Shown piece after piece: positions 21,623-48,360 of a stretch of DNA of 64,000 bases; position 1 is the stretch's first letter, and every line of letters begins with the position of its first letter. This DNA comes from Macrostomum lignano (Eukaryota). The notes under the pieces were generated by a model that made no database searches, was not told the DNA's origin, and saw only the letters and a list, made by a program, of their open reading frames with translations. Made by a program: the position numbers and the translations under genes. The DNA is taken from contig NIVC01000251.1 of the NCBI GenBank assembly GCA_002269645.1, positions 186,001 to 250,000 of the forward strand, given 5' to 3'.

Positions 21623-21902
21623 TGCTGTCTGTCAAATCTAGATGGGAATCGGAACTGGAAAAAAGACTGGATTGACTGTCTTCTATGCAGGTTGGCATGA
21701 GAATATAGCTATAGTTGCGGGAAAGGGATGCAGGAAAATCAAATTCATCATCCAATCAGCGCAGCTATAGCTGTATTGACCAACCCTCACCCATTACTCG
21801 ACCTCCTCCCCATTCTTCCCTCCCCCTTGCCACTCGGGCCTCGATCCTAAATCAAGCTTCAAAAAATGAAAAATATTAAAAATCATTCGAAATGAAAAAA
21901 AA

Positions 21903-30700: not shown

Positions 30701-33700
30701 TCCAACCTGTTATAATACTTTAGCCTCAGAGGGGTGGGCAAGGGGAAACCAAATTGGGCCCCCGACTCTCAGAGTTCCAAGGAAGTTTTAACAGAAAGGA
30801 AGCATTTGCCCCAATACTAGGGCAAAAACCTAGTTTCTAGTGTGATAGTCCAACACAGCAGGTTTCTAGTGTGATAGTCCAATACAGCAGATGCTGCTGC
30901 AAGGAAGGAGTTGCCCAACAGAGGCCGGCCTTGTGCCGGGGTCACTGGCAATCAAAAACATAACTGGCATGGTCTTACTGCCTAGGATGACTGTCAGCTT
31001 TGATTGACCCATAATCTCCAGTGTATTTGTGATGACATTGCACCAGTATATTTACACTACAGTATATGGTACATTTGCATACTAACATGTGCCGCCATGT
31101 TGTTTCGCCGCTAGGTTTTACATAGCTAAGCGCCATGCTATATATAATAGCATGGTTCTGATAGAAACATTTTCCGCCATGATGTTTCCAATTATACGCG
31201 ATATGCTGTTTCTGATAAAAGTGTGCTATGCTGTTTCTGATAACAGCGGCATGCTCTAAGGAATACCATGGTACATGCATACTAACCATGGTCATGCATT
31301 AAACAGCATGCATTACTAACATTCGTCGCCATGCTGTTTCTGATAATGTCAGAAAATGTAAGTATGCAGATGTACCATGGTTTTCCTGAGAGCATGGCGC
31401 TGTTAATCAGATACAGTATGGCACTGTTATCAGCAATAGCATGGCGGCACATATAGGATGCATATGTACCATGGTAGTCCTTAAAGTATGGCACTGTTAT
31501 CTATGAGGTAAAAATAATAAACGCGGGGAATGACGATCAATGGGGCGAAGGTGTTTGCTAGATCACAAGCATGTCTACATGCTTTTTGCAAGCACGACAC
31601 TGACATGCTCCAACGAACAACCACCCCACAAAAAAGCTTGAAAAACGTTTTAACACTTATTAATTGTTATTTTATTTGTAATTTTGACCTCGCCTGGACT
31701 AAAAACCCTAGGCGGGTTAGGGTAACCCTAACTAAAAAAGAAAAAAATAAACAAAATTAAATGAAAAAAATAACATAAATCCTTGGCCCAGCTGACTCGT
31801 CAATATGACTGCCAAACACGGTGAGCAGTCGCGGATTCACCCGGCAGACAATATTGGTCCTGCCTTGCATCCGCCGCTGTCCACTTGTTGTTACTTCTGA
31901 AATGTTGGTTTACTAAAAGATTACATTCTGTAACATAATATATGATTAGAGCTACACAGCAGCGCGTTGAAAGGCGCGGGTAAAGATCCTCTCCGCGAAG
32001 TAGAAATCCTCTCCGTGAAACTGGACTCAATCGAAATTTCTCCGTCAAACAGAGCCCAGCTCTCAGAATTAATTGGTTAGGGTTACGGTTAGGGTTAGAG
32101 CTACAAAGCAGCGTGTTTTGAAGGCGCTGGTAAGGAAATTGAACCAATTCAATTAATTAGATGCGCAACCGATTTTACAGTCAGTCAGTATCAGTCTCAG
32201 CTAAAGTTATTAAGTTATTTATACTGTGATATAACTGAGCTTTTGGTTGCCCGGATCTGGGTCTAAAGATCTTGGAATCCCACCGCTATCACCAGTGTTA
32301 TACTTTAGTTGTTGGGGTGGTTCGGCAGGTTTTGATATCCCACCGCTATCACCAGTGTAGTGCTTGGCTTTCTGGTTTCTGTGGCGGGGTGGACTGCTAT
32401 TACCCGAAGCAACCTTGCTGAGGATACTTATGGGGGCTGAGACTGGGGAGAAATCTAAGGTCAAGGGTAGTGCTGCCACCAGCGTGGAAACCGTAGGATC
32501 CGCAATGAAGGGATCTGTTTGGGCTCCACGCAAATAAATAACGCTAGAACAACTAGTCTCAGATATTTCAATGTCCAAGTGACAGGACTCAATGGTAGCA
32601 AATGGCCTGAGCGGCGCAGTCCTGGCACTGACAAATGTCCGCGCTTGAGCGTGTCTGAGTTTAGCTCTCAGAGGACCCCTAACTCCTATAACCTAATAGC
32701 TACGAATCTCGCAGATGGGCGGCGAGGAGTAGGTCTATGCGCCTGAAGCAGCAATAGACTCACGCTAACTAAGCTCTCAGCTATTTCTTAGAATCGAGCA
32801 CGAGTGCTGCGACTGCACACTCACTCTCACTCTTATTCGCGCCTGTGTCGCAAAATAGACTAAAGCAGAATGGCTTCAGCCAACTGATTTCCTGCCAAAT
32901 AGGGTAGGCTGGAAAACCAGAGCTATAGCGCTAGCAATGCTCTACCAAGACCTGCTCGGGAGCGTGCTTTCTGCTTGAGCGCCGCAATGCTCTACCAAGA
33001 CCTGCTCAGGAGCTTGCAGCTGCTTCTAGCGATGCTCTGCTCTACCAAGACCTGCTCAGGAGCTTTGCTTCGCTGTTAACCGGCGCTAGAGCGCTAGACT
33101 TGGAGAAAGCTCTCGACAAGTCCTCACGAGGCGGTTCTGAGGAAAAATTCAGACAGACGGGCCTGCATTCGTTAATATAGAACGCGGAGGGTGGAGCGTT
33201 TGGGCATTCCGTGGCTTGACCATGGAACTGCAGCCGAAAAGTGCGGATAATGATGCACAACAGATATTGATTAAACATGGGGGAAAGAGTAGCTTGTACG
33301 AAGCGCCGACAGTCGCCTCAAGCCACTAGTGGCAATAGCATGCCAAATTTGGGCTTGTGCGCACAAGGCTGCACGTGAGGGAGGGTTCAGCTCGGGACAC
33401 GGGGTCCGCGAAACCCTCAGTCTAAAAATAGAATGACGCATGGGGAGAGGCTCGGACGCAGGAGGAACGAGAGAGCAGAAGGGGGAAGGGTCCAGAGAGC
33501 GCACGGGGGAGGAGTGCGGCTAACTAGACTTGCGTACACTGAGCGATTGCCCGTGTGGCCATCTGATCAGGTTTTTCGCCCGGTAGGCGATCGGGATTTT
33601 TGCCCGGTTTGTAATACATTTTTTCCTATCTAAAAACCCGAAAATCCTCGGGAAAGTGGTCTCGAAAACGGACGAAGACGGCAGTTTCGTCTGGTTGTTC

Positions 33701-33843
33701 GTCAGGAATTTCGTAGAGGACATCAGGTATTTTCTCGGGTTTCTCTTCGGCTACTCAAACTGATGAGTACCCTGAATAAAACCCGACAAATGACCGGATG
33801 AAAGTGCAATAGCAGAACCCGGCAAATAACCGGGGCAAAATCT

Positions 33844-34132
33844 GACTAAAACCTAACGAAAGCGACACGACGACCCAACCGGACGAATATCCGGAGCAAA
33901 ATCAGACTAAAACCTAACGAAAGCGACACGACGACCCAACCGGACGAATACCCGGAGCAAAAACAGACTAAAACCTAACGAAAGCGACACGACGACCCAA
34001 CCGGACGAATATCCGGAGCAAAATCAGACTAAAACCTAACGAAAGCGACACGACGACCCAACCGGAAGAATATCTGGAGCAAAATCAGACTAAAACCTAA
34101 CGAAAGCGACACGACGATCAAACCGGACGAAA
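33844..34132. repeat. 61-bp subterminal tandem repeat, about 5 copies
   Basis: GACTAAAACCTAACGAAAGCGACACGACGACCCAACCGGACGAATATCCGGAGCAAAATCA starting at 33844, 33905, 33966, 34027, 34088. Confidence 0.95.
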
Positions 34133-34429
34133 AACCCTGCATCCCTATCGAGTTGTGTCTACTCTCGGAAATATGTAGTGCCGACTTAGTAAAACATCTA
34201 CAGTGCGCTTCTGTCAACGGATACCGTGAAGAGTAAAGAAGTAAGACAATTGTCAGTTAGTGTTAATACAAAATATGTAACGTTCCATCTTGCAATTCAT
34301 CAAACTGTTCCAAATCACCTACAAGATCAATATACTCCTCTGTTTTTTTTATTCCAAAGATGTTGTAGAATACAGTCAGTAGGCGCATAGTCGCTAGTCA
34401 TCTAGGCGCATAAATGCGGGAATTTAAAA

Positions 34430-36287
34430 TCACTTCTGACTGGCCAAAAGTATGTTCAGAAAGTCGCCGCAGCTGACTGTGCCGTCCATGGCGCTCTGAT
34501 CGTCGTCCCCCTCCAGATGCCGCATTTCGACCCCTCTGGCATTTCCGGCGTCATCGCCGTCATTGGCGTCAGATGCAGCTGTTGTATTCGAGAGGGTTGG
34601 CTGACAGACTTCGCGGCTCCGAGCAGAGTCAGCGGAGTCTATAATGACGACTGTTGTGGCCTTCGGCTTTGGCGGTTTCGGCTGCTTCCGCTGGGGGGGG
34701 GGGGGAAGGGCGGAGCGCGTTGGGAGTTCCAGTCTCTGCCGCGCAGTCGCAGTGCATTGCGTGAACGCCTGACTTAGACTGTCGGCAGTGCACTGCACCC
34801 CGGCGTTCGCGAGCCACACACGTACTGCAGCCAATTTTCCCGGGTTTGCGGGTGAAGATTTGGCCTGACCGGGCGCCTTGCGCCCGGACAGTGTGCAGCA
34901 GGCGAACTCCCTGTCCGTGAAGACGGCACGCAGGGCAGCTCGGAGAAGCAGTAAGTTTTGCGTCCTCGCCATCCTGTTTGGCTGGCACTTTTTTGTAGGC
35001 TTCTAGCCGATCTTCCGCATCGTGCCGCTTATTCAAAGCTACCTTAACGAAGCCCTGCTGCTCAGAGAATGGCACAAGAGAAGCAGCTGTTAGGTCAACG
35101 TTCGGCGTGGCGGCGTCGCAGGCATCTTTCAGAGCGCTCGTCTGCGCTGCGGACAAGCTCTGCGTTACAGTGAAGGACATGGCGTCCTGCCTGGAATCGC
35201 TGGCGTCGCCGTCATCACCGTCATTGGTGTCACATGCAGCTTTTGTACTCGAGCGGGCCGGCTGAGAGACTTCGCGATCGCGGGCATTCTGGGAAAGCAG
35301 CTCTGACCCCTGAATAAGCAGCGAGTTGCACTGCTGCATGCTGCTGACCAGCAGCACGTTACGATGCTGCTCGTCCTCCAGTTGGCGTAAAAGCGTCCGC
35401 TCCATACGATTCGCGACACGAAGCTGCTCCGTTAATAGTCGGACGCTTTCTCGCTGATTCGTTTCTTCAACTATGCTGTGCTGTAACTGGCTCCCTAGAA
35501 AAGTATGCGGTGGTTCAAACAAAAAAGGCACTATACCCGACCTGAAAGTGCAGAAGTAACGACCAACAATTGATGGCACTCACGCAGGGTGTCTATAAGC
35601 GACGACTGTCGCTCGTTCTCTATAGCAAACGTCCGGCAGGATGCACAGGCACGTGGAAGTTCCGATGGCTGAGCGTGTACGTTTCCTAGGACCGCTGTGC
35701 CGGTCGCGATGCTTCTGGAAGCGAACGGCCCACGTACTAGTGTCCCGAGCCATTTTTTCGCGGCCTTCCTGTTCGCCTTAGCGACGACAATTAAGTCTTC
35801 GCTGCCGACATCGACGTTACTCGGGGACTCGCGTTTGAGTCCAACAATGTCATCGCGCGTGCTGACAACTTCTGTTTTTTCGAAATAGTTGGAGTACTTA
35901 AAAATAAACAATCGCGGTACCGCTTCACGTTCGTAGGGCACCATGTCATGCTGTATGAAAACGTCATCCCGTTGGGTGCCCTCTGCGACAGCAGACGAAG
36001 AAGGGCCCGAAGTCTGTGCAGCAGACATGGTGTCAATATCTTCGATGGCTGACAATAGCGGATCCTGCAGTCGACGTGATTTCTCGGCAGTACGACCGAG
36101 AAATTGACTCAGCACCAACATCGTCATCGTCATCAGTCACAGCTTTGCGCTTCTTTCCACCGGACTTACTCGACGGCGCCTTTGTTGGAGCTGATTTGGA
36201 GGTCGGCTTCGACTTCGACTTTGAAGTGGACGTGGAATTTGATTTCGACTTGCCGACTACGGCAGTAGTCTTCTTTCCTGTGCCCAT
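34430..36287 (-). CDS. Spliced accessory gene of the EnSpm element: Lys/Ser-rich N-terminus, coiled coil, C-terminal BEN-like domain
   Basis: ORFs 36033-36287, 35531-36133, 34629-35579, 34430-34972 with GT-AG candidates between them; LLRAALRAVFTDREFACCTLSGRK...NPGKLAAVRVWL matches the BEN pattern. Exact exon structure unresolved. Confidence 0.6.
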
Positions 36288-36519
36288 TAGGATTAGAGCA
36301 GCTGAAAAAGGTGAGTTTTTGTGTCAATACTGTGTTCTGTGTTCACATGGGTGAAATGTAATTGTACTCGTACGTTACTTTAACTAGGCCTGGACTCAAG
36401 AGTAACAATTAAGGCTGTCGGTTTCCTCCTCAGTCAAAAAGTCCGTACAAATTGTGCCGGCAACAAGGCCTTGTGTATTTATCAGCATATGCTGGTATAC
36501 ATACAAACGTGCATGTCTA

Positions 36520-36665
36520 ACGTCCATCATCTCAATGTCATCATCATCTCAATGTCATCATCATCTCAATGTCGTCATCATCTCAATGTCATCATCATCT
36601 CAATGTCGTCATCATCTCAATGTCGTCATCATCTCAATGTCGTCATCATCTCAATGTCATCAATC
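36520..36665. repeat. Simple repeat ATCTCAATGTC(A/G)TCATC
   Basis: About 8 copies, between the CtIP-like ORF and the BEN gene. Confidence 0.9.
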
Positions 36666-36704
36666 CATCAATGGAGGCAGTCTCCAGTCCATCAATCGCA
36701 GTAG

Positions 36705-37157
36705 TCACTCGTATTCAGTGCGGGGTCTCGGTGACAGACCCCAAAGCGGCCTTCGACGCCGCTTCCTCACTTTCAATTGATCCAACGGTACGGAAGGTGG
36801 TGATGGCGGCATTTCAATCGCAAAGAAGTTTGGCGCTTGCACGATCCGCCTGTGTCGGTGGCGGCCGTGCAGCGCTAAGCGGCGTGCTCGGCTAGTCGGC
36901 GACAGCTCCGCGTACCATGAGGCGCAGTCCGGGCAAGTTTGCGCAGGTAGTAGGCGTCGCTCGTCCCAACGCCTCGGCTCAAATGACGGTGGAGCAGCCG
37001 GTGGTAGCCGGTTGTAGTCCTCCCACGTATACTTGGACTCAGCAGTGGCTCGCGCGCAGGTCGACGTTGGTGGCGGGCCGGGAGAGTGACCACCGATTGT
37101 GGTGTCGCTGCCGTCATCGGAGTCGACGTTGGCACGGGCATCCCCGTCAGCGATCAT
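36705..37157 (-). CDS. 150-aa protein with CtIP/Ctp1/Sae2-like C-terminal domain (CxxC plus RHR), transposon-borne
   Basis: ERRLLPAQTCPDCASWYAELSPTSRARRLALHGRHRHRRIVQAPNFFAIEMP aligns by eye with the CtIP signature ERRKLLGHTCKECEIYY...[30 protein letters not shown]; uninterrupted ORF with basic NLS-like KVRKRRRRP. Confidence 0.75.
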   Translation of the reverse strand: MIADGDARANVDSDDGSDTTIGGHSPGPPPTSTCARATAESKYTWEDYNRLPPAAPPSFEPRRWDERRLLPAQTCPDCASWYAELSPTSRARRLALHGRHRHRRIVQAPNFFAIEMPPSPPSVPLDQLKVRKRRRRPLWGLSPRPRTEYE

Positions 37158-37633
37158 TCGGTCGAAAAGTTTTGGCCAGTCAATTATGGGGCGATCCGAC
37201 AGGATTTAAATTCAATGGGGTCAGTCTGAAAATGGTTTTGACCACCTATAAGAATATTCTTATTCTTATGCATATGAACACAACAAAAAATAAAGTGAAT
37301 ATAGTATACAGAAGTAACACGTAAATAAGCTACATATGACTCATAAAGCATCTCATCCAGATGCTTCTGGAAACCGGACTCAATTTTTTGGTTTAATTGC
37401 ATCTACTATTACGTGCATATATACACATTTTTACAAAATCGCTAACAATTAGAATGACTACTACAGTTTGTTAAAAAATATAATAGAAATTTGATTATTT
37501 TTTTGCCAATCGTAAAGTAAGGAAAAAACGAAAGGAAAATACGTTTTATGCTGGCAATCGGTTATCCTAGCCTGTCAATCAGTTATCCCAGCCTGTCAAT
37601 CAGTTATCCCATTGCCACGGACGCCAGCAGACT

Positions 37634-38745
37634 CTACGAATAGCCCAACTGCGGATGGGCCAGCAGAGCTACTTTTGTGTCGGTGACGACACAGACGCCA
37701 CGAAACTGTGGCAGCCCCACATGAATCAGGTCGCCGAGGTAGCTCAAGTCGCCGAAGGGATCGCATGCGAATACTCGGAAGTGCGCGAGTCGACAGCCTC
37801 GATTAGGTGACGTTGTGGCAACATGTGCTAGTTCCTCCAGCGGGTCGACGGCCGCGAGAACTGGCAGTACGAGCAGTCCGAGCCTAACCTGCTCACCTTG
37901 ACATTCGATGGTTTGCACTCGGCAGAATCGGAAATCCGTCGTAGTGTCACCTTCGATGGCCACGAAGCCTGCCGCATCCTGACATCCGGGAGTGAAAATT
38001 CGTATTGTCCAACCGGATTTCAGAGTGGCACTGTGCCATCCGACTTGCCAGCGCTTCGGTCGACGAAGCAAGACATCTGGAAGGGTGAGTACTTCTGTTC
38101 GACGGAATAATTCCTCTTCATCTTGCTGATCCCCGTGCCCGATCAGTCGCGCTCGCGCTTGGATGGTGCCGATGTGGCGCTCCACGGCGCCAACCAGCTC
38201 GACGTCGGTGCGCCGCGTCCCATGCAGGCGTTTTTGCAGGCGCAAGTGCGTGCTTTCGAAAATTCCAGCCGATAGGCGGTGCGCAGAGCCGGCCAGATGG
38301 ACGTATGTCAGCATGTGGCAGCACACCTGATGAGCATTATAGGTTAGTGCTCTTAAGGAGTACAACCTATACAGTTTGTCGTGGAAGTGGCGCAATGCAA
38401 TCTCTACGTGCCGCAACTCAGACAGAGGCGCATAATCGGCAGTCATCCAGAACACTGCAGCGGAAAGAAGTAACAGATGCTGGTAGTGGGCGGGTGGTAG
38501 GACGGCTTCCAAAACGAGGGGGCCGTAGGCCATCAGCCACATTTCAAACTCGTGCCCACGGAAATTGCGGAGGTCACTCAGTGGACGCACTTCATGGCGT
38601 TGGACGTTGATGGGCAGCCGGATGCGGAGCAGCAGCTCATCGACCTGATGTTGAAGCCGGTGCAGGTCCGGACAATTAGTTTCTCCTCGGTCCGGCTTCT
38701 CGGCCCGCACCAGGAATAATTGGTACATTATCATCCGGACCAGAC
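37634..38745 (-). pseudogene. EnSpm-type transposase, C-terminal half
   Basis: RIRLP...VRPLSDLRNFRGHEFEMWL, YQHLLLLSAAV, TYNAHQVCCH, AGIFES (catalytic E region). The first ~20 aa of the listed ORF come from the LINE 3' end. Confidence 0.88.
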
Positions 38746-38833
38746 TTGACTTAGCTGCAGGGCTGTCCCGGAGGGGACACAGCGGGAAGGCGCGGGCGCC
38801 CATTCCGCTAGTCCCTGAACGGCCGACGCGTCG

Positions 38834-41800
38834 CTATGGACGGAGGGTTGGCGCCGCCCAGGGAGGTCCCCCAGTGTCGCCAGCAGCTATGGTGCTCTCT
38901 GGAAAGGAGAGTTCAGCCCTGCGGGTGGCCCGAAGGTAGCGCATGAGCTGATTAAAGTTTTCGGGTTTACACGCTTCAGTAATAGATGTGTGTGGCCCGA
39001 GGTAAGTGAGTCTGGCCCGCGTGAAGGCGGGACAGATGCTGACGAAATGCTCAGCGGTTTCGTCACCTGAGTTGCAGAAACTACAGGTGGCGTTGGTGGC
39101 GTTGCCCTGCAGGTACTGGTGCCTGGAGAAGCAGCCGTGACCAGAGAGGGTCATGGTGGCAGCCCGGATGTCTCTGCGCGAGAGGCGCAAGAGGAGCTTC
39201 CGGAGCTGGTGAGAGGGCTGAGGGACAGCGCCTCTGGATTGCCTGCAGTTCGTGCGGTTCGCCCAAGTCGAGCGGTGCTGAGTCCTGATCCACGCTTTGA
39301 AGCGCGAGTCGATGACACAGCCAGGAATCGGGACGAGCCGGAGGCACCAACTTTTGCAAGGGTGTCAGCCAACTCATTTCCTCGGATCCCCACATGCCCC
39401 GGAACCCACTTAAGGGTAATTTTGTTGGCGGAACCCAACACATTGAGGAGTTTGATACAGTCAAGGACTGTAGCAGAGTTGGTGCTGCAGCCACTGATGG
39501 CGTGCAAGGCAGCTTGGCTGTCCGAATGGAAAATGATGTTCTTACCAGTAACGCCAGTGGCGAGAAGCTCTGCAGTGCAGGAGCTGATGGCCAGAACTTC
39601 ATTTTGGAAAACACTGGAGTTGACCCCAGTGTATTGAGCGTGGGTAGCGATGACCCTCCCGTTCAGAAAGATTCCAACACCAAAGCCGGTGTTGGCTGAC
39701 TGCTTAGAACCGTCGGTGTAGCAATGAAGCTCACCAGGGTTCCATGGTCATTGATGTTATCGCGCGAGTCGATAGCTACGGAGTAGCGCTGTCTCAGGTT
39801 GAGCGTTGAGGCAATGCCATCGGTGAAGACGCGATTGGCCTGACACTCGTTGAGAAAGTTGAGGCACAGATCGCTATGCGGGACAAGGTTCCGCTTAGCA
39901 GGTGCTCTCATGTAAATGAATTTGACGCCGGCATCAATTAGACACCGCGTCGTTCTAGCCGCCTCACCCCTGATGAAGAGGTCAAGAGGCGGAAGATTAA
40001 GAAAGGCCCCCATGCCAGCAAAGGGCGTGGACCTGGTGGCGTTGCAGATGAGCCTACACGCTCTGCCTTGGATCGTGTTGAGCAGGTCTGCATGGCTTTT
40101 GACCTGGGTAGCGCTAACCCAGACAACAGAGGCGTACGTAATGGCAGGTCTAACTACGGAAGTATAGATCCACCAAAGCCGCTTTGGGGATAGACCCCAA
40201 GAAGTGCCAAGTGCTCGTCGGAGCTGGGCCAGGATGGCTGAGGCACGCTTGGCTTTTGCTTTCACGTGGAGGACCAGTTGAGCCGGTGGTCAAGTATGAC
40301 CCCGAGACATCTGGTCTGGTGCGCGAAGGCAATATCTCTGCCGTAGAGCTGCAGAGGACGTATGTTCCAGCGTAGTCTGCTGGTAAACATAATGGCAACG
40401 GTTTTGGGCTCAGAGAGTTCCAGACCATTGTCATTGGCCCAGGATTCTGCTTTGCGGATAAAGCTCTGCATCAGATCCCTGAGCGTGCTGGGAGACGGTC
40501 CTGCCACAATGGCCGTGACGTCATCAGCATACCCGACTTTGAAGACGGGGTCGGGTCGGGAGTCACTCAAAAGAGCGTCCATGACCAGGTTCCAGAGCGT
40601 CGGGGTGAGGACTCCGCCTTGGGTCCACCCTTACAGACTCTGGTGGAGGCAGTTTGCCCAAGAAGTTGAGCAGTGACCGTACGGTTGGAGATCATGTACA
40701 TGATCCACCGTATGAGGGTAGCATGAGCTTTGCGATTTTGAAGGGCCCTCTGAAACGCTTCAAAGATAACGTTGTCGAAGGCGCCAACAATGTCAAGAAA
40801 GAGAGCCAGAGCGTAACCGTCACCCAGTACCGCCCTTTCAATCTTCTCGACAATCGCATGCAGGGCGCTGTCAGTCGACCTCCCGGTACGGAAGGCGTGC
40901 TGATTATTGCTGAGGGGCATCGCTGTCAGCTCGCAGGACAGCAGCCGCCAGAGAATAAGCCTCTCAGTGAGCTTAAGCATTGCTGACGTTAAGCTAATAG
41001 GCCGGAAGGCCTTGACGCTTTGGTAGTCACCCTTCCCAGGTTTGGGAATAAAGACTACCCGAGCTTCAGTCCAGCATTTGGGAACGTATCCCAGCTGGAT
41101 AGAGGCCCGCATGAGATTGCGGGTGAGTCTCAGGAACGAGGGTATCTTGGCTGCTTCACGAAGGAGAACAGGGTAGATACCATCAGGTCCAGGAGATTTG
41201 AAGGTTCTGACCGCACGAGCGATTAGGTCTTCAGTGACAATGCCCGCCGCTAGGGTGGCTCCATCCATCGAATGGTTGGGCTCCGGTCTAGCAGTAGGTA
41301 CCCTCGGGAAGAATGTGCTAAGCATATGCTGAAGCACTTCTGGGTCTTTAGTAAGAGAGCCATCATCTTTTTTGATCATGGCTAATTTGGAAATTTTGTC
41401 CATTGTAAGGGCCTTGACAAGCCTAGAAGTAGGTCTGTCTTGATCCAATTCATTGCAGAATTGGCGCCACTTACATTCCTTGGCCTTGCGCACTTCAGAT
41501 TTGAAATTGCGGGAGGCTTGCCGGAAAAGCTCCATGTCCTCCGGGTTTCCGGTCTTCATGGCACGGCGATGAAGGCTTTTGGCCTTCCGCCTGAGTTTCC
41601 CCAGCTCCGGGTTCCACCACGGCGCCGAGGTCTTGCCTTTGTAGGCGCGAGCAGGACAAGCCGCTTCGTAGGCTTCAATAATGCAACCTGTCAGCGTCTC
41701 AGCCATATGATCCACATCCTCGCAGGTCTCAATCGGACGTAAGTCCGTGAGTTCCTGCAGGTGCAGATCAAGGGCAGCCTTGTAGGCCGCCCAATCAGTG

Positions 41801-42535
41801 TTGCGGATATTGCGTCTCCAAGTGATCGGAGACTGGGTTTTAGTGTCCGCGATGTTAAAGGCGATAAAGCAGTGGTCAGACAGGGAGGGCTCCTCAGACC
41901 AGACTCTCCACTCCTCAACTCTGTCAAAGAGTCTTGGGGTAACGAGTGTGGCGTCGAGGACCTCGGTCCATCTGCCATTATTAAAGGTAGGAGTGCTGCC
42001 GCGGTTGCAGAGCATGAGGTTTGTGTTAGAGATGAGGCCAGAAGCTCCTCTCCTCTAGTGTTGGTATCTTTGCTGCCCCAGTGCTTGTGGTGCGCGTTGA
42101 GGTCGCCCCCTAAGCACAGCTCAGCGTTCTGGGACTCGCAGTACTGCGCGAGGCGCAGTAAACTCTCAGGAGCAGGGTCTCTGTCGCCTGGGATATAAAC
42201 CGAGGCAACAAGACACGTACGCGGAGAGAAATGATTAGATTGGATGACACAGAGGTCTCCATCAGAGAGATCAGTCCTCAGCCAAGCTGGAGATGGCTAG
42301 CAGCGAGGATAGCCGCTCTAGGGCGGCTGTTCCCCGGGCCACACACATAAAAATCAGAGTAGCCAGAGGGAATGTTGGGCAACTTACCGTTGCGCATCCA
42401 GGGTTCCTGGATCAGGATGAGGCCTGGCCTGTACAGCTCAGCAATCTTCATCAGATTTACTGACGCAGATACGCAATGCTGTAAATTAATTTGCAGACAG
42501 AATGTCGCTCCTTTGGCAGCGTGGAGCTTAGTCAT
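38834..42535 (-). pseudogene. LINE ORF2 (endonuclease, reverse transcriptase, RNase H, zinc finger), several frameshifts
   Basis: LQINLQH, ILIQEPW, LSDHCFI (APE); SPGPDGIYP, RPISLTS, FLDIVGAFD, GYADD (RT); WVPGHVGIRGNELAD (RNase H); CSFCNSGDETAEHFVSICP. Confidence 0.93.
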
Positions 42536-42574
42536 ACTGTATTAAATGCAATTTCTGGCTAGAGCCCAGGGCCA

Positions 42575-44134
42575 TCAAGGAGACTTGGACAACAGATCGT
42601 CCTCGTCCCAGGCCGCTGGGGCTTGACTGGGAGATGGGAGTTGGTCGACGTCCATGGCCTCCTCACCCCCACCGCCCCCCCAGCAGAGTCCTCGGCTCCG
42701 ATGACAGGATGGAGGAAGCTTCCTCACCTGCATCTTTACCTTCAGACCCCACCAAGGTGGCCGAGGAGAGCTCGGATTCCGAAGACCCGGCCTCGTCCTC
42801 AACTCCTTCTCCGACTGGCAGGTTTGGTTCCCGGGCTTGGCCGGAGCCGTTACCGCGGTCGCCGAACTGCTGCTAGCAGAGGGGCGAGATGCAGCTTTGG
42901 CTTTGGGATCGGCTTGCGCCTTTCCTTGGGCCTTAGACTGCGCCCCGCTCTTGCCGGAGATGCCAGGGTTGGCAGTAGCCTTCCCTTTGGCAGACTTTCC
43001 TCGGCGCATCTTGAGCTTGAGGGCACCCAGCTGGAAAGAGGATCCATTAGGGTACCGACTCGCCCAAGTGCTGGAAAGGCCGAGGACAATTGAGTTGCCC
43101 GTCTCCCCCCTGCGGACTTTACGGTGATACACCAGTCCACTAGCAGGGAGGTCGGGGTTCAGACGCAGTAGGACCCGGCGGATAACGTCTGGTCCAGCTG
43201 CGGTGCTCTTAGCAGGGACGAAAACCACATAGGGTATCGTCTTTGGACGCTGGCCCTCGCGAAGAAAAAGAGCTCCGCCAAGGTCAGCATCCAAGGAGAC
43301 CGTCGGTAGCCGCTGGAGCAGCTGCCGAGCGTCCTCCTCGCTGCTAGGAGCAATAAGAACGAATGTGCTTCGCAGCACCATCCGCTCAATGCCGATGGAG
43401 ATTCCCTCCTCGACAGTCAGCTCAATCAGATAGGAGTCAACAGCACTCCACACTTTTTGAAGCTGATCAGTGGTCCAGTCCTGGTCGCGACCTTGGATGA
43501 TCACTCCCGGGATTTTGGCCTTGGCCTTCGCCGCAAAGGTAGCTCCCGAAGGAACCTCCTTGTTGGCAGTGGCCATTTGTTGCGCCGTGATTTCGGCCTC
43601 AGCAGCCGCGGCAGCAGCTCCAGGGAGCGCCGCCGCTGAACTACTGGAGCTTCCACCGGCCGGCCCGCCTGGTTGCCTTGGGACTCCAGTCGCTTCAGCA
43701 TCCATGGTGGACGCCGCCGCTTTGGCCCCCGCAGCTCCCTTTTTGGCCTGCCTTTTGGCGCGTTGTTTAGCGCGTTTGCGCTCAAGCCGAGCCCGCTGAG
43801 CTTCATCGGATCTGCCAGATTTGGCCGGTCCTTTAGGCTCAGAGCTCGCGGTTCCCTTAGATCCACCAGCGGAGCTGGCAGGTCTTTGGGTATTTTGAGT
43901 TTGGTAGCTCTGGTCGAATCTGCCAGCAGAGCCAGCCGGTCCTTCCTTTGCCACAGTTGAATCAGTCGGTTGGGATCTGCCAGCAGGGCCGGCCGGTCCT
44001 TCGGACTGAGGTTGGGGTTTAGAAGGGTCCCCGTCCCTAGAGTTAGCTTGATTATCCATAGACGGCTCGAAGGCCATGATAAAAGGTTGGTGGGCTACCC
44101 TCAAAGGGGCGCGGTACCCACCCGGCCGCTCCAC
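42575..44134 (-). CDS. LINE ORF1 (gag-like, DUF4780-like, no CCHC knuckle seen)
   Basis: 519-aa open frame ending 40 bp before ORF2; low-complexity N- and C-terminal parts around a globular core. Confidence 0.8.
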   Translation of the reverse strand: MERPGGYRAPLRVAHQPFIMAFEPSMDNQANSRDGDPSKPQPQSEGPAGPAGRSQPTDSTVAKEGPAGSAGRFDQSYQTQNTQRPASSAGGSKGTASSEPKGPAKSGRSDEAQRARLERKRAKQRAKRQAKKGAAGAKAAASTMDAEATGVPRQPGGPAGGSSSSSAAALPGAAAAAAEAEITAQQMATANKEVPSGATFAAKAKAKIPGVIIQGRDQDWTTDQLQKVWSAVDSYLIELTVEEGISIGIERMVLRSTFVLIAPSSEEDARQLLQRLPTVSLDADLGGALFLREGQRPKTIPYVVFVPAKSTAAGPDVIRRVLLRLNPDLPASGLVYHRKVRRGETGNSIVLGLSSTWASRYPNGSSFQLGALKLKMRRGKSAKGKATANPGISGKSGAQSKAQGKAQADPKAKAASRPSASSSSATAVTAPAKPGNQTCQSEKELRTRPGLRNPSSPRPPWWGLKVKMQVRKLPPSCHRSRGLCWGGGGGEEAMDVDQLPSPSQAPAAWDEDDLLSKSP

Positions 44135-44595
44135 CTGACCGGGCAGTAGGCCAATAGCACCCTCAAGGCTGGCCCGACACCAGGAGGGGGACCGCTTGCG
44201 ACCGGACTACTCCCCGGCCTTCCAGCCCATCGGCACGGTCAACACCTTAGGCATTAGAGAGTACGTTGAGCAGTACCACGGCCTGCAGGTTGGCGAGCCA
44301 GACCCGCATACCCAAATTCGGCCGAAGCCACTGGATAGGGTCGCCAGCGCCGGAGCCCAGTCTGTCCAGCAGCCCTAGGGACTGCCTTGAACACACGCGG
44401 GGACGAGTACCCTGGGTCGACTTGCGAGACAGCGTGGGGGGGGGTCTGCGGCTGCCAGAGGCAAATAGAGGGTGCAGACCTCCCACCAGCCTTGACCTGC
44501 TGAAGATAGGGGCAGGCGTGAAGCATCGCAGACCTTAGCCCATGGGCCTAGTCTGACTCATACTTCACTGGCATGCTGAATACGCCTTCGCGTGC

Positions 44596-46303
44596 TCATC
44601 CGGACCAGACCTAGGTGCAGCTGGTGGAGATAACACGGCGGACATCGCGCAAGTCAAAACCCGGGAGGCGTCCTAACGGAGAGTGGCCTCGGACACCCAA
44701 TGTGTCTGTGTTCTGGTGCCGAGCACCTGCTAGGTGTTGCTCCGCTAATCTGCGCGTATCTGCCATGCTCCGTAGGACAGTTTGCAGACAACCTAGACGT
44801 CGAGCAGCATTCTGCATTGCTGGCGTTAAGCCGACGTCGAAGACACGCCCAGAGCCTGAAGGATGAAGACGCGTAGCAATGTAGCACTTCTCGCAGCCGT
44901 AGATAGCCGTGCATCGTCGCATGCGGAGCGCATCTGCACGAGCCGGTGAGTCGAACATTGCTAGCAACGGATGGAAGCGTATCGTACGCTGAACTCCATC
45001 AGCGTCAGTGTACGTTACGCCCCGGATGCGTAAAGAAATCAGCGCGTCGACGACCACCGGAAGGAAAGCCGCTGAACTCACTTTGGTCTTAGCAGCCCAG
45101 AGCCCACAGATTATGACATAGCGCAACTTGACATGATCGTGAACCTCGTTGATGCTTAAGTAGACTGGACACACCTCTACCTTGCTGGTTGACCGTGCTG
45201 GAAACCCATCAGAGCTCAGAGTATACGAGAGGTCGCTCTTAGCAACTAGGTTTATCGACTCCCGAAACTGTCTGTACAGGTGACTGTTGTAGAAATGGAT
45301 GGTGTCTTCGTGCGCATTGAAGTCGGAAGGAAAAGTCAAATTATGCAGCAGTCCACATGACTCTATGTAAGTTCGGATCTGCTTTCTAATGTTGAAAACC
45401 CAGAAGTTTGCGACTCTCATTGATCCGCAGTCTCTGCAATGTCCACCGTTTTGACTGCAGTCTCCTCGGTTGTTTACGTAGCACTCGTTGCACACAGTGA
45501 CGCATTTTTCGGAGCCGATGTAACTCTGGGCGGACTTTAGCGTCCGCCACATAGTTCTTTCAGTGCGCGGAATTCGACTTCCCGGAACCAGACAATGCAC
45601 AAGACGTAGAAGTCTGGTTATTTTTTTACTTGGGATTCCAAGATCAATGGCGCAGTCGTTGATATGACACACAGCTTCACCAATGGTGCCCGTGATGGGT
45701 TCGCCGTTGTGCCACGGTAGCTGTAGCCAGGGATCAAGAACTGGCTGTTCCTGGCCATCGCTGTCGCTGGAGTCAAGTGACTCAGCGTCACTGCCGTCAC
45801 TGGAGTCTGTGGGAAAAGCGCGATAGTTTTTCTGTATCAACGGATATCGGGGCCGCATTTTGCAGATCCTCGATGCTACTCACCATGCTCAGGGGGCTCA
45901 GAGTCGGGTGTCTCTGTACCGTCGCTGCCATTGCGGCCAGCGCTGTTTACGGACTCAGCGTCACTGCGGCTTTGGTCGCCTCCACTGCTGCCGTCACTGG
46001 AGTCTGTGGGAAACGCGCGATAGTTTTTCTGTATCAACGGATATCGGGGCCGCTTTTTGCAGATCCTCGATGCTACTCACCATGCTCGGAGGGCTCACTG
46101 TCACCGGTGTCTACGGACTCGGCACCTCTGAGAAGCTGCGACGATGCTGCGACGACAGTGCTACTGCTGCGCGAAGTACTAGGTACAGCGCGACTAACCG
46201 GGGAACGCGGTCGGTCAGTCAACTCAGCGCAGGCCGCGTCAATATTTTGTTGCAGTCGTCGCGCCCGCTGATAAAATCGTCTGTCGCGTCGTGATCGCTC
46301 CAT
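44596..46303 (-). pseudogene. EnSpm-type transposase, N-terminal half; exons 46081-46303, 45884-46003, 45806-44596; frameshift near the YLHQL motif
   Basis: CNECY...CRDC, YTLSSDGFP (D1), CPVYLSINE, FDSPARA (D2), GCEKC, YLHQLHLGLVR; two 77-nt GTGAGT...CACAG introns. Confidence 0.88.
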
Positions 46304-48360
46304 TGTAATTATTTCAGGTTTCTTAATGCAGCTGGAAATTCATGGAACTTTATTAACAAAGGCTGCTACGTACGCTACGCCTAGCGGGCCAATTCGGGGA
46401 TGGGACTTTGCTTATACATTTTTGTAAAAGAGGAAATCAACGTTGGAATCCCACAGTAGCATGCAGCCTTCAGAAATGTGTGCGATGACAGCATTAAAAT
46501 GACAATATTTTTTCTCAGTTTACGTGAACTACGCTCGTAATGTAACATACGAAGACGCTCATATGATATATATATAAAGATGAGCGGAAAAAATACTGCA
46601 AGAGAACAAAACAGGAGCACATTACAGAACATACAATTACAAGAAAATCTTCATGTCAATTGTCAATTATACACTGTGTCTCCCATACCATTTTCAACCC
46701 AATCCTGAATTAAAGGCTTTCATCAGCTCTTTTCTCCGGCTCTTGTCCAGTCGAAGAACCAGAGAAAGAACCGGGCAAAATTCCAGGCGGAAATGTTATT
46801 TCATCCGCTTTTACTCCGGAATTCCCTGGTTACTAAACTGGTTCCAAACCTGGCGAAGGACCGGGTAAAAAACCAGAGCACTCGTACGGTTTTTCCTCCG
46901 GAATTTCGCCTGGTTTAGAAAGGCAGAGAAAAAACGGATAAATTCGCCTGGTTTATGTTCTTCGCCTGGAAATGGGGCAAAAAACATAGCAAGCCAGAGC
47001 AAAACCGGGCGAAAAACCTGATCGGATGGCCACACGGGTGTGCGCGGCAGGCCAGGCAACAACAGTACAGGCAAGCGCCAAATTTGGCGGCTTCCACTAA
47101 CTAACCCTAGGCTAGGCAAACTTCCTAATTTCCTATGTTAAAGATTGCGCCATATTGTGCAACTTCTGAGCGCCAAGGAAGGCTGCTTAGAGTGCATGGA
47201 GGCAGCAGAAAATTCCTATTCCAGATACTAGCAGCGGACAGCAGTGCCTAAGATGTGACTGCGGCCCTATGCTTGCAGCAGAAGGCTGCGGCCACATCAC
47301 GTCTATGGCTGAAACGCGAGTGCGCTATGCCCATTGACGCACTCGTCAGCGTGCTAGATTCTTCTTCTTTCGTCTGACATGTTGAAAAAACTGAGTGTGG
47401 AACGGCATAGACAGCGCTTTTTATGGATTTCAGTGCTTAAATGAGTGCTCCAAAGATTAAATTGCCTGCCGGTTTGACACAGTTTTTACCATAGACAACT
47501 GGCAGTGAGGCTCAAAATGCATGTGTTTTTTCTATCTTGGATTAAATTGCTTGCCCGTAGTCTCTAGCTCGTACTAGCTTGCAAAATGCTATAATAGCCA
47601 TTAAATAACCTGTCTATGTCAGAATGTCCGAGGCTGCATTTAATGGTCCCGAGGCCAGCGAAGCGAGCCGAGGACTAGCTTTATTTATGTATCCCCCGTT
47701 CGGTATGTTGGCTGCTAGCGGGGATGAGGGGGCAGATTGCTGGCTGGGGGTGTGGGGGCGAAGCCCCCACATTTAGGCCACAGACAAATTTTAATTTATT
47801 TGCATCGATGCAAAGTGAGGCAAACTAGCAAAAAGTCAAGGGGAACTAAAGTACAAAAGAACTATAAAAAATAACAATAAAAAATGAAAAGTATAAATTA
47901 CGTTTTTAGTCTATGGCACAAAGCTAAAGGCTAATCTAGAAAGAAATTACTGTACGACGAAGTAAAGTTATTTGTGCAGCAACACTGCAAGCCGGGAGAC
48001 TTATACGTCTGAGAGACGTGCTGATTTTATCGACAAATAAGCCAAGAGATATGTCTGGACAGTCTGGTGCTCGACATCCAATCTTGTCGGATGCAGAAGC
48101 TGATGCACTGGTAAGTGCAACAGTGCCACCAAATACGGTCAAGAAGAGTGCGTGGATGATATCAACGTTTAAAGAGTGGCACGAATGCAAAAAAGAAGAC
48201 TGGGCAAAGAATGGCGGCTCCTCTCTGATGGTATTGAAATCTATGGACGAATTTACTAGGTCCGACTTGAACTATTTGCTGAAGCTTTTCATCCTTGAGG
48301 TAAGGAATAAGAAGCATGAGCGCTACTCGGCTGGAACTCTCAAGGACTTCGTGTCTATGC

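What the first reader, a model, noticed from the sequence alone, without database searches (positions are those of the whole stretch)
36705..37157. A CACTA/EnSpm transposon carries its own mini CtIP/Sae2-like DNA end-processing domain
Seen: an intact 150-aa ORF between the transposase and the BEN gene, inside matched TIRs with a TG TSD, containing R-W-D-E-R-R-L-L-P-A-Q-T-C-P-D-C-A-S-W-Y...R-L-A-L-H-G-R-H-R-H-R...P-N-F-F. Known: the conserved CtIP/Ctp1/Sae2 C-terminal domain has CxxC followed by RHR and P.NFW, and stimulates MRE11-RAD50 cleavage at blocked or hairpin-capped ends; CACTA excision is thought to leave hairpinned donor ends. Inference: the element captured this domain without the N-terminal coiled coil to steer repair of its own breaks. 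I know of no described CtIP cargo in this superfamily, but could not search.
Basis: partly seen in the sequence, partly recalled or inferred. Interest (0 to 1): 0.92.

Follow-up and report, generated by a model that had tools for sequence, protein, structure and literature searches.

The report
Flatworm transposon carrying a mini-CtIP gene
A family of cut-and-paste DNA transposons in the flatworm Macrostomum lignano carries, under purifying selection, a short gene copied from the tail end of the host's own DNA-break-processing factor CtIP, which suggests the transposon manipulates repair of the breaks it makes; the copy in this window is a decayed one.

Summary
The ORF (36705-37157, minus strand, 150 aa) and its CxxC...RHR...PNFF motifs are real. 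A profile of the ORF and four diverged genomic relatives matches canonical CtIP C-termini (hhalign 99% probability, E 6e-18) and retrieves vertebrate CtIP from 1.84 billion proteins. Pfam SAE2 is the top family for all five relatives; the window ORF alone scores below threshold.

The ORF lies inside a transposon, 33550-47038. It has 35-bp inverted ends, a 2-bp TG duplication, subterminal repeat motifs and a CMC-type transposase. It does not have CACTA termini.

The genome is Macrostomum lignano. At least 42 non-host loci in about 10 diverged subfamilies carry the gene. In all but one subfamily it sits just downstream of the transposase. pN/pS is 0.2-0.5 with synonymous sites saturated, the same constraint as on the transposase.

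A separate host CtIP with an N-terminal coiled coil exists at three other loci. It groups with the transposon copies to the exclusion of all other CtIPs, which fits capture from the host. A related element from another organism lacks the gene.

The window copy is dead: a LINE splits the transposase, the ancestral ATG is now CTG, and the accessory gene has two frameshifts. The "BEN" neighbour is supported by fold only. Function, meaning engagement of the host MRE11-RAD50-NBS1 complex (MRN) at transposon breaks, is inferred, and whether it activates or blocks is open.

The parts
33550..33584 (+). Terminal inverted repeat at the 3' end of the element (genes are on the minus strand). The flank directly outside it ends in TG (33548-33549).
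47004..47038 (-). Terminal inverted repeat at the 5' end of the element. The flank directly outside it starts with TG (47039-47040).
   Evidence: At least 24 genomic copies of this end are 96-100% identical.
33573..34133 (.). Subterminal cluster of the 13-bp motif AACCGGGCRAAAA (8 hits), including a 61-bp x 5 tandem array at 33825-34131. Candidate binding sites for the BEN-fold accessory protein.
46769..47015 (.). Subterminal cluster of the same motif at the other end (5 hits).
44611..45879 (-). N-terminal part of the transposase (422-aa open frame). It holds the first catalytic D (SSDGFP) and the second D followed by CxxC (MFDSPARA...YGCEKC).
   Evidence: No Pfam hit.
38746..44595 (-). Nested non-LTR retrotransposon (ORF1 at 42575-44206; endonuclease/RT at 40567-42015) that interrupts the transposase. 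It has a 15-bp target duplication, TCATCCGGACCAGAC, and is absent from copies C1726 and C2249.
37634..38745 (-). C-terminal part of the transposase (YNAH...FES..LRLQKRL motif; ends ...HPQLGYS).
36705..37202 (-). Mini-CtIP gene. It has an N-terminal DW[SP]xL[LF]D motif, one acidic DSDDGSDTT repeat unit (1-4 units in other copies), then the CtIP C-terminal domain (about residues 45-140 of the 150-aa ORF).
36525..36662 (.). 17-bp x 8 tandem repeat in the spacer downstream of the mini-CtIP gene.
35584..36287 (-). Exon 1 of the accessory gene: a Lys-rich N-terminus plus a conserved beta-rich domain with CxxC (orfB). Frameshifted in this copy by 7 extra bases near 36123.
35495..35583 (-). Predicted 89-nt intron (GTGAGT...ttttctAG) that joins orfB in frame to the coiled-coil/BEN reading frame.
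   Evidence: The fused single ORFs in L046, L026 and L043 support the join.
34430..35494 (-). Exon 2 of the accessory gene: a coiled coil plus a BEN-fold domain. Frameshifted in this copy by a 26-bp deletion near 34947.

Best explanation
SHOWN.
- The ORF is a decaying copy of the second gene of a 7.6-8.6 kb cut-and-paste DNA transposon family of Macrostomum lignano. The element has 35-bp inverted ends, a 2-bp TSD, subterminal 13-bp motifs and a CMC-type DDE transposase. It also has an accessory gene encoding a beta-rich domain, a coiled coil and a BEN-fold domain.
- The gene encodes a protein of about 170-290 aa. Its last ~105 residues are a complete CtIP/Sae2 C-terminal domain: YNRLP, R-DER-L, CxxC, RHR, PNF[FW] and a KRRRRPL tail.
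- The N-terminal tetramerising coiled coil of CtIP is absent.
- The closest relative of the domain is the host's own three-exon CtIP gene (Mlig004387), which has a coiled coil and sits at three other loci.
- The gene is present in about 10 transposon subfamilies whose transposases are only 35-49% identical. In all but one it sits in the same position, and it is under the same purifying selection as the transposase.
- A related element from another organism has the transposase and the accessory gene but no CtIP gene.

INFERRED.
- An ancestor of these elements captured the 3' part of the host CtIP's last exon and kept it because it helps the element.
- The retained motifs are the ones that, in CtIP/Ctp1, dock onto MRE11-RAD50 and DNA and switch on the MRE11 endonuclease. 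The most likely mechanism is therefore that the mini-CtIP engages the host MRN complex at the double-strand breaks made by the transposase. This would uncouple the first step of break processing from the oligomerisation and regulation of host CtIP.
- My preferred direction is activation: clipping of blocked or structured donor ends and resection, which favours homology-directed repair that copies the element back into the donor site. The opposite direction, an MRN decoy, is not excluded.

The confidence figure of 0.6 covers the whole statement, mechanism included:
- identity, capture and selection: about 0.9
- MRN engagement: about 0.6
- activation rather than blocking: about 0.35-0.4
For: Homology:
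- Pfam SAE2 is the only or top family for 5 of 5 subfamily members, best E 8.1e-6.
- PF08573 scores 28.8 bits, above the 19.8 cut-off, on the C10 copy.
- The transposon profile finds 76 proteins at E<=1e-3 among 1.84e9. Almost all matches lie in the C-terminal ends of 500-1500 aa proteins, and the ones I read are CtIP/RBBP8.
- hhalign against 12 canonical CtIP C-termini gives 99.0% probability, E 6e-18, over 97 columns.
- The alignment shows every signature motif.

Transposon context:
- TIRs and many copies, including internally deleted derivatives of 1.2-2.6 kb.
- Conserved order transposase, mini-CtIP, orfB, BEN-like across subfamilies.
- Subterminal motif: 13 of 14 window hits lie at the element ends.

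Selection:
- dN 0.153, dS 1.18 for the window family against the L008 family.
- pN/pS 0.21-0.50 with pS 0.63-0.90, Fisher p 1e-8 to 1e-25. The transposase C-terminus of the same pair gives 0.25.
- Of the 42 non-host loci, 33 have no stop in the matched part.

Host gene:
- P0002/P0078 = BOX15_Mlig004387, with an N-terminal coiled coil.
- Its N-terminal exons occur only at C176, C2929 and C3324.
- A canonical CtIP query ranks those three loci first and finds no other host-type CtIP.

Origin:
- Transposon copies plus host form a clade with 100/99 support that excludes all other CtIPs.
- L046 has the transposase followed directly by a fused orfB/coiled-coil/BEN ORF and no CtIP-like ORF.

Mechanistic background, from preprint 10.1101/2023.08.05.552090:
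- The CxxC...RHR 'C-rich-H' domain is modelled as the anchor to Mre11.
- The loop just downstream contacts Rad50.
- A 15-aa C-terminal peptide of S. pombe Ctp1 suffices to stimulate Mre11 without CDK phosphorylation.
Against: - There is no expression, protein or biochemical evidence of any kind.
- The window ORF alone is below the Pfam threshold (14.1 bits), and so is the host protein (13.4 bits).
- The residue matching human T847, the activating CDK site, is Ala or Asp in the transposon copies and Ala in the host gene. Regulation in this lineage therefore differs from the textbook case and cannot be read off.
- From my own knowledge, CtIP without its tetramerisation domain is defective in cells. 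A monomeric tail could therefore act as a competitor rather than an activator.
- The tree leaves host, the L029/L026 group and the other transposon copies as a trichotomy, so the direction of transfer is not proven.
- One CtIP-like subfamily (C1566, C2718, C1267) has no transposase within 10 kb upstream.
- Two multi-copy transposase lineages (P0080, P0082) show no CtIP-like hit nearby. The gene is therefore not indispensable to this transposase family.
- Hairpin formation by CMC transposases is not documented in anything I could read.
Confidence: 0.6

Rival explanations
1. MRN decoy or inhibitor. The monomeric CtIP tail occupies the CtIP docking sites on MRE11-RAD50 (and DNA) without the DNA bridging that tetramers provide. 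It thereby shields the excised, transposase-bound transposon ends from MRN-CtIP clipping before integration, or suppresses resection so that the donor site is rejoined.
For: - The coiled coil is absent in all transposon copies, whereas the host gene has one.
- All binding motifs are retained.
- MRN-CtIP specifically attacks protein-blocked ends, and a transpososome presents such ends.
- There are precedents of mobile elements blocking Mre11-Rad50, for example phage N15 TelN (PMC12624138, listed).
Against: - C-terminal fragments, down to a 15-aa Ctp1 peptide, are reported to be sufficient to stimulate rather than block Mre11 in vitro.
- A pure blocker would not obviously need the whole domain, including the basic tail, conserved over ~105 residues.
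Confidence: 0.25
2. DNA-binding or synapsis helper that does not involve MRN. The CxxC/RHR module, which binds DNA in Ctp1, was co-opted as an architectural protein for transposon-end pairing or target capture.
For: - RHR and the basic KRRRRPL tail are invariant.
- The gene sits beside a DNA-binding (BEN-fold) accessory gene.
Against: - The element already has a dedicated DNA-binding accessory protein and subterminal motifs.
- Conservation also covers the PNF[FW] loop, which is modelled to contact Rad50 rather than DNA.
Confidence: 0.08
3. Reverse direction. The CtIP-like domain spread from the transposon into the host gene, or the host gene was converted by a transposon copy. The 'host CtIP' would then be partly of transposon origin.
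For: - The tree gives an unresolved trichotomy of host, the L029/L026 group and the remaining transposon copies.
- The host shares lineage-specific features with the transposon copies, namely QAPNFFAIEMPP and GKRRxRPLR.
Against: - The host gene has the canonical coiled-coil plus C-terminal domain layout and is the only non-transposon CtIP in the genome.
- P0003, a coiled-coil CtIP from another organism, is sister to the whole clade.
- A related element lacks the gene.
Confidence: 0.06
4. Functionless captured gene fragment (as in Pack-MULE or CACTA gene-fragment capture) that is open by chance, or an assembly artefact that places a host exon inside a repeat.
For: - The window copy itself is decaying: the start codon is lost and there are four private amino-acid changes.
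- It sits in a dead element.
Against: - There are at least 42 loci in about 10 subfamilies, in a conserved position, with saturated synonymous and low non-synonymous divergence.
- The host gene lies elsewhere, with its own upstream exons.
Confidence: 0.02

Closest known systems
CtIP / RBBP8 / Ctp1 / Sae2 / COM1 (Pfam SAE2, PF08573), the co-factor that switches on the MRE11 endonuclease
   Same: The C-terminal ~105 residues align motif for motif: [FY][DN]R[LV]P, R-[DE]ER-L, CxxC, RHR, P-x-[FY][WF], and the basic RRRRP tail. Profile-profile probability is 99%.
   Different: - No N-terminal coiled coil or tetramerisation domain.
- Only 150-290 aa long.
- Encoded inside a multi-copy transposon.
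- The position of the activating CDK site is Ala or Asp, as it is in the host gene.
- The window ORF alone scores below the Pfam cut-off.
Small CtIP orthologues: S. pombe Ctp1 (294 aa, with a CDK-independent C-terminal activating peptide) and Paramecium homologues under 200 aa (as cited in 10.1101/2023.08.05.552090)
   Same: - Small size.
- A non-phosphorylatable residue at the T847/S267 position.
- Activity that resides in the extreme C-terminus.
   Different: These are single-copy host genes. Ctp1 retains an N-terminal tetramerising coiled coil, and the transposon protein does not.
En/Spm (CACTA) and the wider CMC superfamily: a two-component element with a transposase (TnpD) and a DNA-binding accessory protein (TnpA) that binds subterminal repeats
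   Same: - TIRs plus clustered subterminal short motifs.
- A large DDE transposase with D...CxxC and YN-H...FE..LK motifs (a weak DUF4218 hit on a relative).
- A separate DNA-binding accessory gene.
- Internally deleted non-autonomous derivatives.
   Different: - The termini read CCCGTG, not CACTA.
- The TSD appears to be 2 bp (Mirage-like) rather than 3 bp.
- The transposase has no Pfam hit.
- The accessory protein has a BEN fold.
- There is a third gene, derived from CtIP.
Repair modulators encoded by mobile elements: phage Mu Gam (Ku-like), lambda Gam, phage N15 TelN (blocks Mre11-Rad50; PMC12624138), Helitron RPA-like genes (from my own knowledge except TelN)
   Same: A mobile element carries its own protein that acts on the host's double-strand-break machinery.
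   Different: Those are phage proteins or single-strand-binding proteins. I found no eukaryotic cut-and-paste transposon described with a CtIP/Sae2-derived gene.
Host-gene capture by DNA transposons (Pack-MULEs, CACTA and Helitron gene fragments; from my own knowledge)
   Same: Part of a host gene, here the 3' part of the last exon, ends up inside an element.
   Different: Captured fragments are usually non-functional and specific to one family. This one is kept under purifying selection across about 10 old subfamilies.

Membership tests
SAE2/CtIP C-terminal domain (PF08573) | Pfam profile score above the gathering cut-off (19.8 bits) | tested here: inconclusive
   The window ORF scores 14.1 bits, E 0.1, which is below the cut-off. 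The C10 subfamily copy scores 28.8 bits, which is above it. All 5 of 5 subfamily members have SAE2 as top hit, best E 8.1e-6. The host CtIP itself scores only 13.4 bits.
SAE2/CtIP C-terminal domain (PF08573) | Significant profile-level similarity to bona fide CtIP C-termini | tested here: met
   hhalign gives 99.0% probability, E 6e-18, over 97 columns. hmmsearch retrieves CtIP/RBBP8 proteins at E 4e-9 to 1e-3 in a library of 1.84e9 proteins.
SAE2/CtIP C-terminal domain (PF08573) | CxxC followed by RHR (the 'C-rich-H' domain) | tested here: met
   C75-P-D-C78 and R99-H-R101 of the window ORF are invariant in all subfamilies.
SAE2/CtIP C-terminal domain (PF08573) | Rad50-contact loop with a CDK-phosphorylated S/T-P just after RHR (human T847, yeast S267), followed by NF[W] | tested here: not met
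   P-N-F-F/W is present, but the phospho-acceptor is Ala (QAPNFF) or Asp (HDPNFW, YDPNFF). The host gene also has Ala. S. pombe Ctp1 likewise lacks it.
Full-length CtIP orthologue | N-terminal coiled-coil tetramerisation domain | tested here: not met
   No coiled-coil region is present in the transposon proteins. The host's N-terminal exons occur only at the three host loci.
Full-length CtIP orthologue | Stimulates the MRE11-RAD50 endonuclease | not testable with these tools
   This needs biochemistry or genetics.
CACTA/En-Spm sensu stricto | Termini 5'-CACTA... | tested here: not met
   The termini read CCCGTGTGGCC....
CACTA/En-Spm sensu stricto | 3-bp target site duplication | tested here: inconclusive
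   The one copy with both flanks in hand shows TG/TG (2 bp), and the 3-bp flanks differ (TTG against TGT). No further copies could be fetched.
CMC (CACTA-Mirage-Chapaev) superfamily | Transposase matches Transposase_21 / DUF4218-type profiles | tested here: inconclusive
   The window-family transposase has no Pfam hit. The distant relative P0001 hits DUF4218 at E 0.0035, 17.6 bits, below the cut-off of 27. The conserved D, D...CxxC and YN-H...[FY]E motifs are visible in alignment A5. Reading them as the CMC signature rests on my own knowledge.
CMC (CACTA-Mirage-Chapaev) superfamily | Subterminal repeated motifs and a separate DNA-binding accessory protein | tested here: met
   13 of 14 motif hits lie within 600 bp of the ends, against 3.6 expected in the whole window. 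The accessory protein has a BEN fold.
BEN domain (neighbouring gene) | Pfam BEN profile hit | tested here: not met
   No BEN hit at E<=1 for five subfamily versions. A profile search of PDB sequences is also empty.
BEN domain (neighbouring gene) | BEN fold | tested here: met
   The AF2 model has pLDDT 76.8. The top 13 Foldseek PDB hits are all BEN domains (Bsg25A, Insv, BEND6, BANP, NACC1), with TM 0.54-0.64 and probability 0.72-1.0, though E-values are only 0.02-2.4.

The most novel reading that the evidence does not exclude
This would be the first eukaryotic cut-and-paste transposon family that carries its own repair-pathway-choice factor. On this reading, a coiled-coil-less, CDK-independent mini-CtIP captured from the host recruits or activates MRE11-RAD50 at transposase-made breaks. 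The donor site is then resected and repaired from the sister or homologue, which restores the element. A conservative cut-and-paste event thereby becomes a net copy gain. This may be especially relevant in the neoblasts and germline of a highly regenerative flatworm.
Probability: 0.3. Interest if true: 0.9.

Novelty: new variant of a known kind. Interest (0 to 1): 0.78.

Why it matters
Cut-and-paste transposons depend on the host to repair the breaks they make, and which repair pathway is used decides whether the element gains copies. A transposon-encoded, selectively maintained copy of the MRN-activating end of CtIP would be a natural case of a mobile element manipulating the first committed step of break repair.

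It would also provide three practical things:
- A ready-made minimal CtIP module, shaped by natural selection, for dissecting how the C-terminal domain acts on MRE11-RAD50 without oligomerisation or CDK control.
- A testable model for how CMC/CACTA-type elements are processed after excision.
- A possible tool for biasing repair at programmed breaks in M. lignano, a flatworm model with established transgenesis.

Tried and rejected
- **Word-indexed search with the window ORF** against 5.8e9 proteins found nothing. Transposon ORFs were excluded from the M. lignano annotation.
- **PDB sequence searches** with the ORF and with profile A1 found no CtIP C-terminal structure, so no structural comparison of the CtIP domain was possible.
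- **Idea that the Ala at the T847 position is a transposon-specific, dominant-negative change.** Rejected, because the host gene has the same Ala.
- **Idea that the acidic DSDDGS[DE]TT repeats and the 'TVIP' stretch are homologous to the host's middle region or to SDT-type Nbs1-binding motifs.** BLASTP finds significant similarity to the host only over the last 100-117 residues, so this stays a speculation.
- **Pfam BEN for the neighbouring gene:** no hit. Only the fold search supports BEN.
- **orfB domain:** no Pfam, PDB-sequence or fold match.
- **Transposase classification through the last protein search** gave only unannotated M. lignano or metagenome proteins.
- **Fetching second halves of 12 loci.** As a result, TSDs of further copies, full transposases of other subfamilies and the M. 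lignano Rad50 sequence could not be read. I did not try to get round this limit.
I used single proteins instead.
- **A transposase tree to test for a single acquisition** was not built. Only C-terminal fragments of 110-150 aa were in hand for most subfamilies.
Full report
**1. The observation.**
The minus strand of 36705-37157 holds an uninterrupted 150-codon ORF. Its translation contains the quoted string...RRWDERRLLPAQTCPDCASWY...RRLALHGRHRHR...APNFFAIEMPP...KRRRRPL.
- On its own it gives only a sub-threshold Pfam match, and that match is to SAE2 (PF08573): E 0.1, 14.1 bits against a cut-off of 19.8.
- It matches no PDB sequence.

**2. It is a repeated gene, and the genome is Macrostomum lignano.**
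A six-frame search of the window's own assembly (764 Mb, 5269 contigs) found 59 matches at 45 loci, from 100% down to 39% identity. Most have open frames of 160-413 aa.
- The closest database protein is BOX15_Mlig004387 of M. lignano (P0002/P0078).
- Its C-terminal exon is identical to loci L022-L024 of this assembly.
- The assembly size and scaffold number match Mlig_3_7 (PMC5730564).
- That paper also says transcripts overlapping repeats were removed from the annotation. This explains why the word-indexed protein search with the window ORF found nothing.

**3. Homology to CtIP is real.**
I aligned the window ORF with four diverged genomic relatives (alignment A1).
- All five have SAE2 as their top or only meaningful Pfam family, best E 8.1e-6.
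- A genome scan with PF08573 scores the C10 copy at 28.8 bits, above the cut-off.
- A profile of A1 searched against 1.84 billion representative proteins found 76 hits at E<=1e-3. Apart from the two closest, nearly all matches lie in the C-terminal ends of 500-1500 aa proteins. The ones I read are unmistakable CtIP/RBBP8 sequences.
- Profile-profile comparison with 12 canonical CtIP C-termini (A2) gives 99.0% probability, E 6e-18, over 97 columns.
- The alignment shows the whole domain: [FY][DN]R[LV]P, R-[DE]ER-L, CxxC, RHR, P-x-[FY][WF] and the basic RRRRP tail.
- One textbook feature is missing. The residue at the position of human T847 is Ala or Asp. The host gene also has Ala, so this is a feature of the lineage and not of the transposon.

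**4. The transposon.**
Comparison with other copies fixes the element at 33550-47038.
- *Ends.* The termini are a 35-bp inverted repeat starting CCCGTGTGG. These are the only two matches in the window, against 0 expected. The flanks are TG|...|TG, while the 3-bp flanks differ, so the one testable copy indicates a 2-bp duplication.
- *Copy number.* At least 24 copies of the right end are 96-100% identical. Many pair with a left end only 1.2-2.6 kb away. These are internally deleted, non-autonomous derivatives and indicate recent activity.
- *Subterminal motif.* Of 14 window matches to AACCGGGCRAAAA, 13 lie within 600 bp of the ends, against 3.6 expected in the whole window. They include a 61-bp x 5 tandem array.
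- *Transposase.* It is about 790 aa. In the window it is split into 44611-45879 and 37634-38745. It has no Pfam hit. It does share conserved D, D...CxxC and YN-H...[FY]E..LK motifs with its few relatives. One of those relatives weakly hits DUF4218, the CACTA-associated domain, at E 0.0035.
- *Classification.* I therefore call the element CMC-like with a CACTA-style architecture. It is not a strict CACTA element.

**5. The neighbouring genes.**
Downstream of the mini-CtIP gene lies orfB: a Lys-rich N-terminus plus a conserved beta-rich domain containing CxxC. It has no Pfam, PDB or fold match. After it comes a coiled-coil protein.
- The C-terminal domain of that coiled-coil protein gives no Pfam BEN hit.
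- It does fold (pLDDT 76.8) into a structure whose 13 best PDB matches are all BEN domains, with TM 0.54-0.64.
- In three other lineages (L046, L026, L043) orfB and the coiled-coil part form a single ORF; in L046, the one read to its end, this includes the BEN-like domain.
- In the window a GTGAGT donor at 35583 and a ttttctAG acceptor at 35495 join the two frames.
- The element therefore probably has three genes: the transposase, the mini-CtIP and one DNA-binding accessory gene.

**6. The window copy is dead.**
- A 5.85-kb non-LTR retrotransposon with a 15-bp duplication splits the transposase. It is absent from the C1726 and C2249 copies.
The copy also carries four private amino-acid changes.
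- The accessory gene has a +7 bp indel and a -26 bp indel relative to the open C1907 copy.
- Contig C3051 shares the left flank at 98.9% identity and lacks the LINE. It is probably the allelic or homeologous copy.

**7. Conservation and selection.**
The order transposase, mini-CtIP, orfB, BEN-like recurs in subfamilies whose transposases are only 35-49% identical to the window's.
- For further subfamilies, the adjacency of transposase and mini-CtIP follows from coordinates.
- Between subfamilies, synonymous sites are saturated (pS 0.63-0.90) while pN is 0.13-0.37. This gives pN/pS of 0.21-0.50, with Fisher p from 1e-8 to 1e-25.
- The transposase C-terminus of the same pair gives 0.25.
- The mini-CtIP is therefore as constrained as the transposase.
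- N-terminal to the domain, the proteins share a short DW[SP]xL[LF]D motif and 1-4 tandem acidic DSDDGS[DE]TT-type units. No coiled coil is present.

**8. The host gene and the origin of the cargo.**
- Mlig004387 (P0078, 481 aa, partial) has an N-terminal coiled coil and the C-terminal domain.
- Its N-terminal exons occur only at C176, C2929 and C3324.
- A canonical invertebrate CtIP domain query ranks those three loci first. It finds only transposon-type copies otherwise, with the window copy near the bottom.
- In a maximum-likelihood tree of 90 C-terminal domains, transposon copies plus the host gene form one clade (100/99) that excludes every other CtIP. A coiled-coil CtIP from a metagenome, P0003, is sister to it (99/96). 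Within the clade, host, the L029/L026 group and the other transposon copies form an unresolved trichotomy.
- Similarity to the host is confined to the last 100-117 residues, at 55-60% identity. That region lies within the host's last exon.
- A related element from the same metagenome sample as P0003 has the transposase followed directly by the fused accessory ORF, with no CtIP-like ORF.
- The contig of the most distant transposase relative also lacks one.
- Two M. lignano transposase lineages (P0080, P0082) show no CtIP-like hit either.
- The simplest reading is that an ancestor of a subset of these elements captured the 3' part of the host CtIP gene, long ago (synonymous sites against the host are saturated), and kept it.

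**9. Mechanism.**
According to the preprint 10.1101/2023.08.05.552090:
- The CxxC...RHR module is modelled as the anchor of CtIP on Mre11.
- The loop just after it contacts Rad50.
- In S. pombe a 15-residue C-terminal peptide of Ctp1 stimulates Mre11 without CDK phosphorylation.
- MRN with CtIP is the activity that clips hairpin-capped and protein-blocked ends.

All of these elements are conserved in the transposon protein, while the tetramerisation domain is missing.
- I therefore infer that the protein engages the host MRE11-RAD50 at transposase-made breaks.
- Whether it activates or blocks cannot be decided from sequence. Activation would mean clipping and resection of the donor ends, followed by homology-directed repair that restores the element. 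Blocking would mean protecting the excised, transposase-bound ends.
- I lean to activation.
- That CMC transposases leave hairpins is not documented in what I could read.

**10. Novelty.**
Full-text searches for CtIP/Sae2 together with CACTA, EnSpm or transposon-encoded proteins found nothing relevant. Work on the M. lignano genome does not describe this family. Accessory genes and captured host fragments in transposons are known, and phages are known to encode modulators of Mre11-Rad50. A selectively maintained CtIP tail in a eukaryotic cut-and-paste element appears to be undescribed. I rate it a new variant of a known kind, of high interest but with its function untested.

Noticed in passing
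window 38746-44595: A full-length-looking non-LTR retrotransposon is nested in the transposase. It has a 543-aa ORF1 frame and an endonuclease/RT ORF with an RVT_1 hit, and is flanked by a 15-bp target duplication, TCATCCGGACCAGAC. It is absent from the probably allelic copy on C3051, so it may be a recent, polymorphic insertion.
   Followed up: partly
L026-L028 (G000 C1566:120448-120876, C2718, C1267); L038: A CtIP-like subfamily is present at three loci. Its 289-337 aa protein has a different N-terminus (MSDHWSHAATCEICKALVHENWALRAEVERLR..., a CxxC plus a short helical stretch). It is followed by a fused orfB/coiled-coil ORF, but there is no transposase within 10 kb upstream. It could be a non-autonomous element or a domesticated gene pair.
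   Followed up: partly
G000 C212, C930, C1499, C1686, C2297, C2877, C888, C772 (P0082 family); C581, C4357 (P0080): These are related transposase lineages annotated as hypothetical proteins (946-967 aa). One has 8 or more copies at 99% identity. No CtIP-like hit was detected nearby, so cargo-free relatives seem to coexist with the cargo-bearing ones.
   Followed up: partly
Host gene, G000 C176:165211-168498 (also C2929, C3324); protein P0078: The host CtIP of M. lignano has Ala where human CtIP has the CDK site T847, and it has a T-P at the position of human T859. It also scores below the Pfam SAE2 cut-off (13.4 bits). CtIP regulation in this flatworm may be CDK-independent at that site, as in S. 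pombe.
   Followed up: no
window 36525-36662 and 33825-34131: There are two tandem arrays inside the element: 17 bp x 8 just downstream of the mini-CtIP stop codon, and 61 bp x 5 in the subterminal region, each unit carrying the AACCGGRC motif. The number of acidic repeat units inside the mini-CtIP coding region also varies between copies, from 1 to 4.
   Followed up: partly
window 50680-51780 (+) and 47940-48440 (+): An ORF with DUF3504 (E 6.7e-22) and a weak phage-integrase match looks like a Crypton-like tyrosine-recombinase element. A nearby ORF has a weak QRICH1-domain match.
   Followed up: no
window 21870-25120 (+): By eye, these look like LTR-retrotransposon pol frames (the 22801-24112 frames resemble RNase H and integrase); none was scanned against any profile library. 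A 4-unit protein-level repeat (SMSVPATPPTTVRRDSVAAT) lies in an adjacent ORF at 20425-21138.
   Followed up: no
window 60001-62000: There is a strong local GC-skew excursion (-0.49) in the composition profile. I did not examine it.
   Followed up: no
L045 and L046 (JGI sample 3300040801): One environmental sample holds two relevant sequences. One is a 315-aa coiled-coil CtIP that is sister to the Macrostomum host/transposon clade. The other is a related transposon without the CtIP gene. An unsampled relative, possibly another flatworm, could therefore date the capture.
   Followed up: partly
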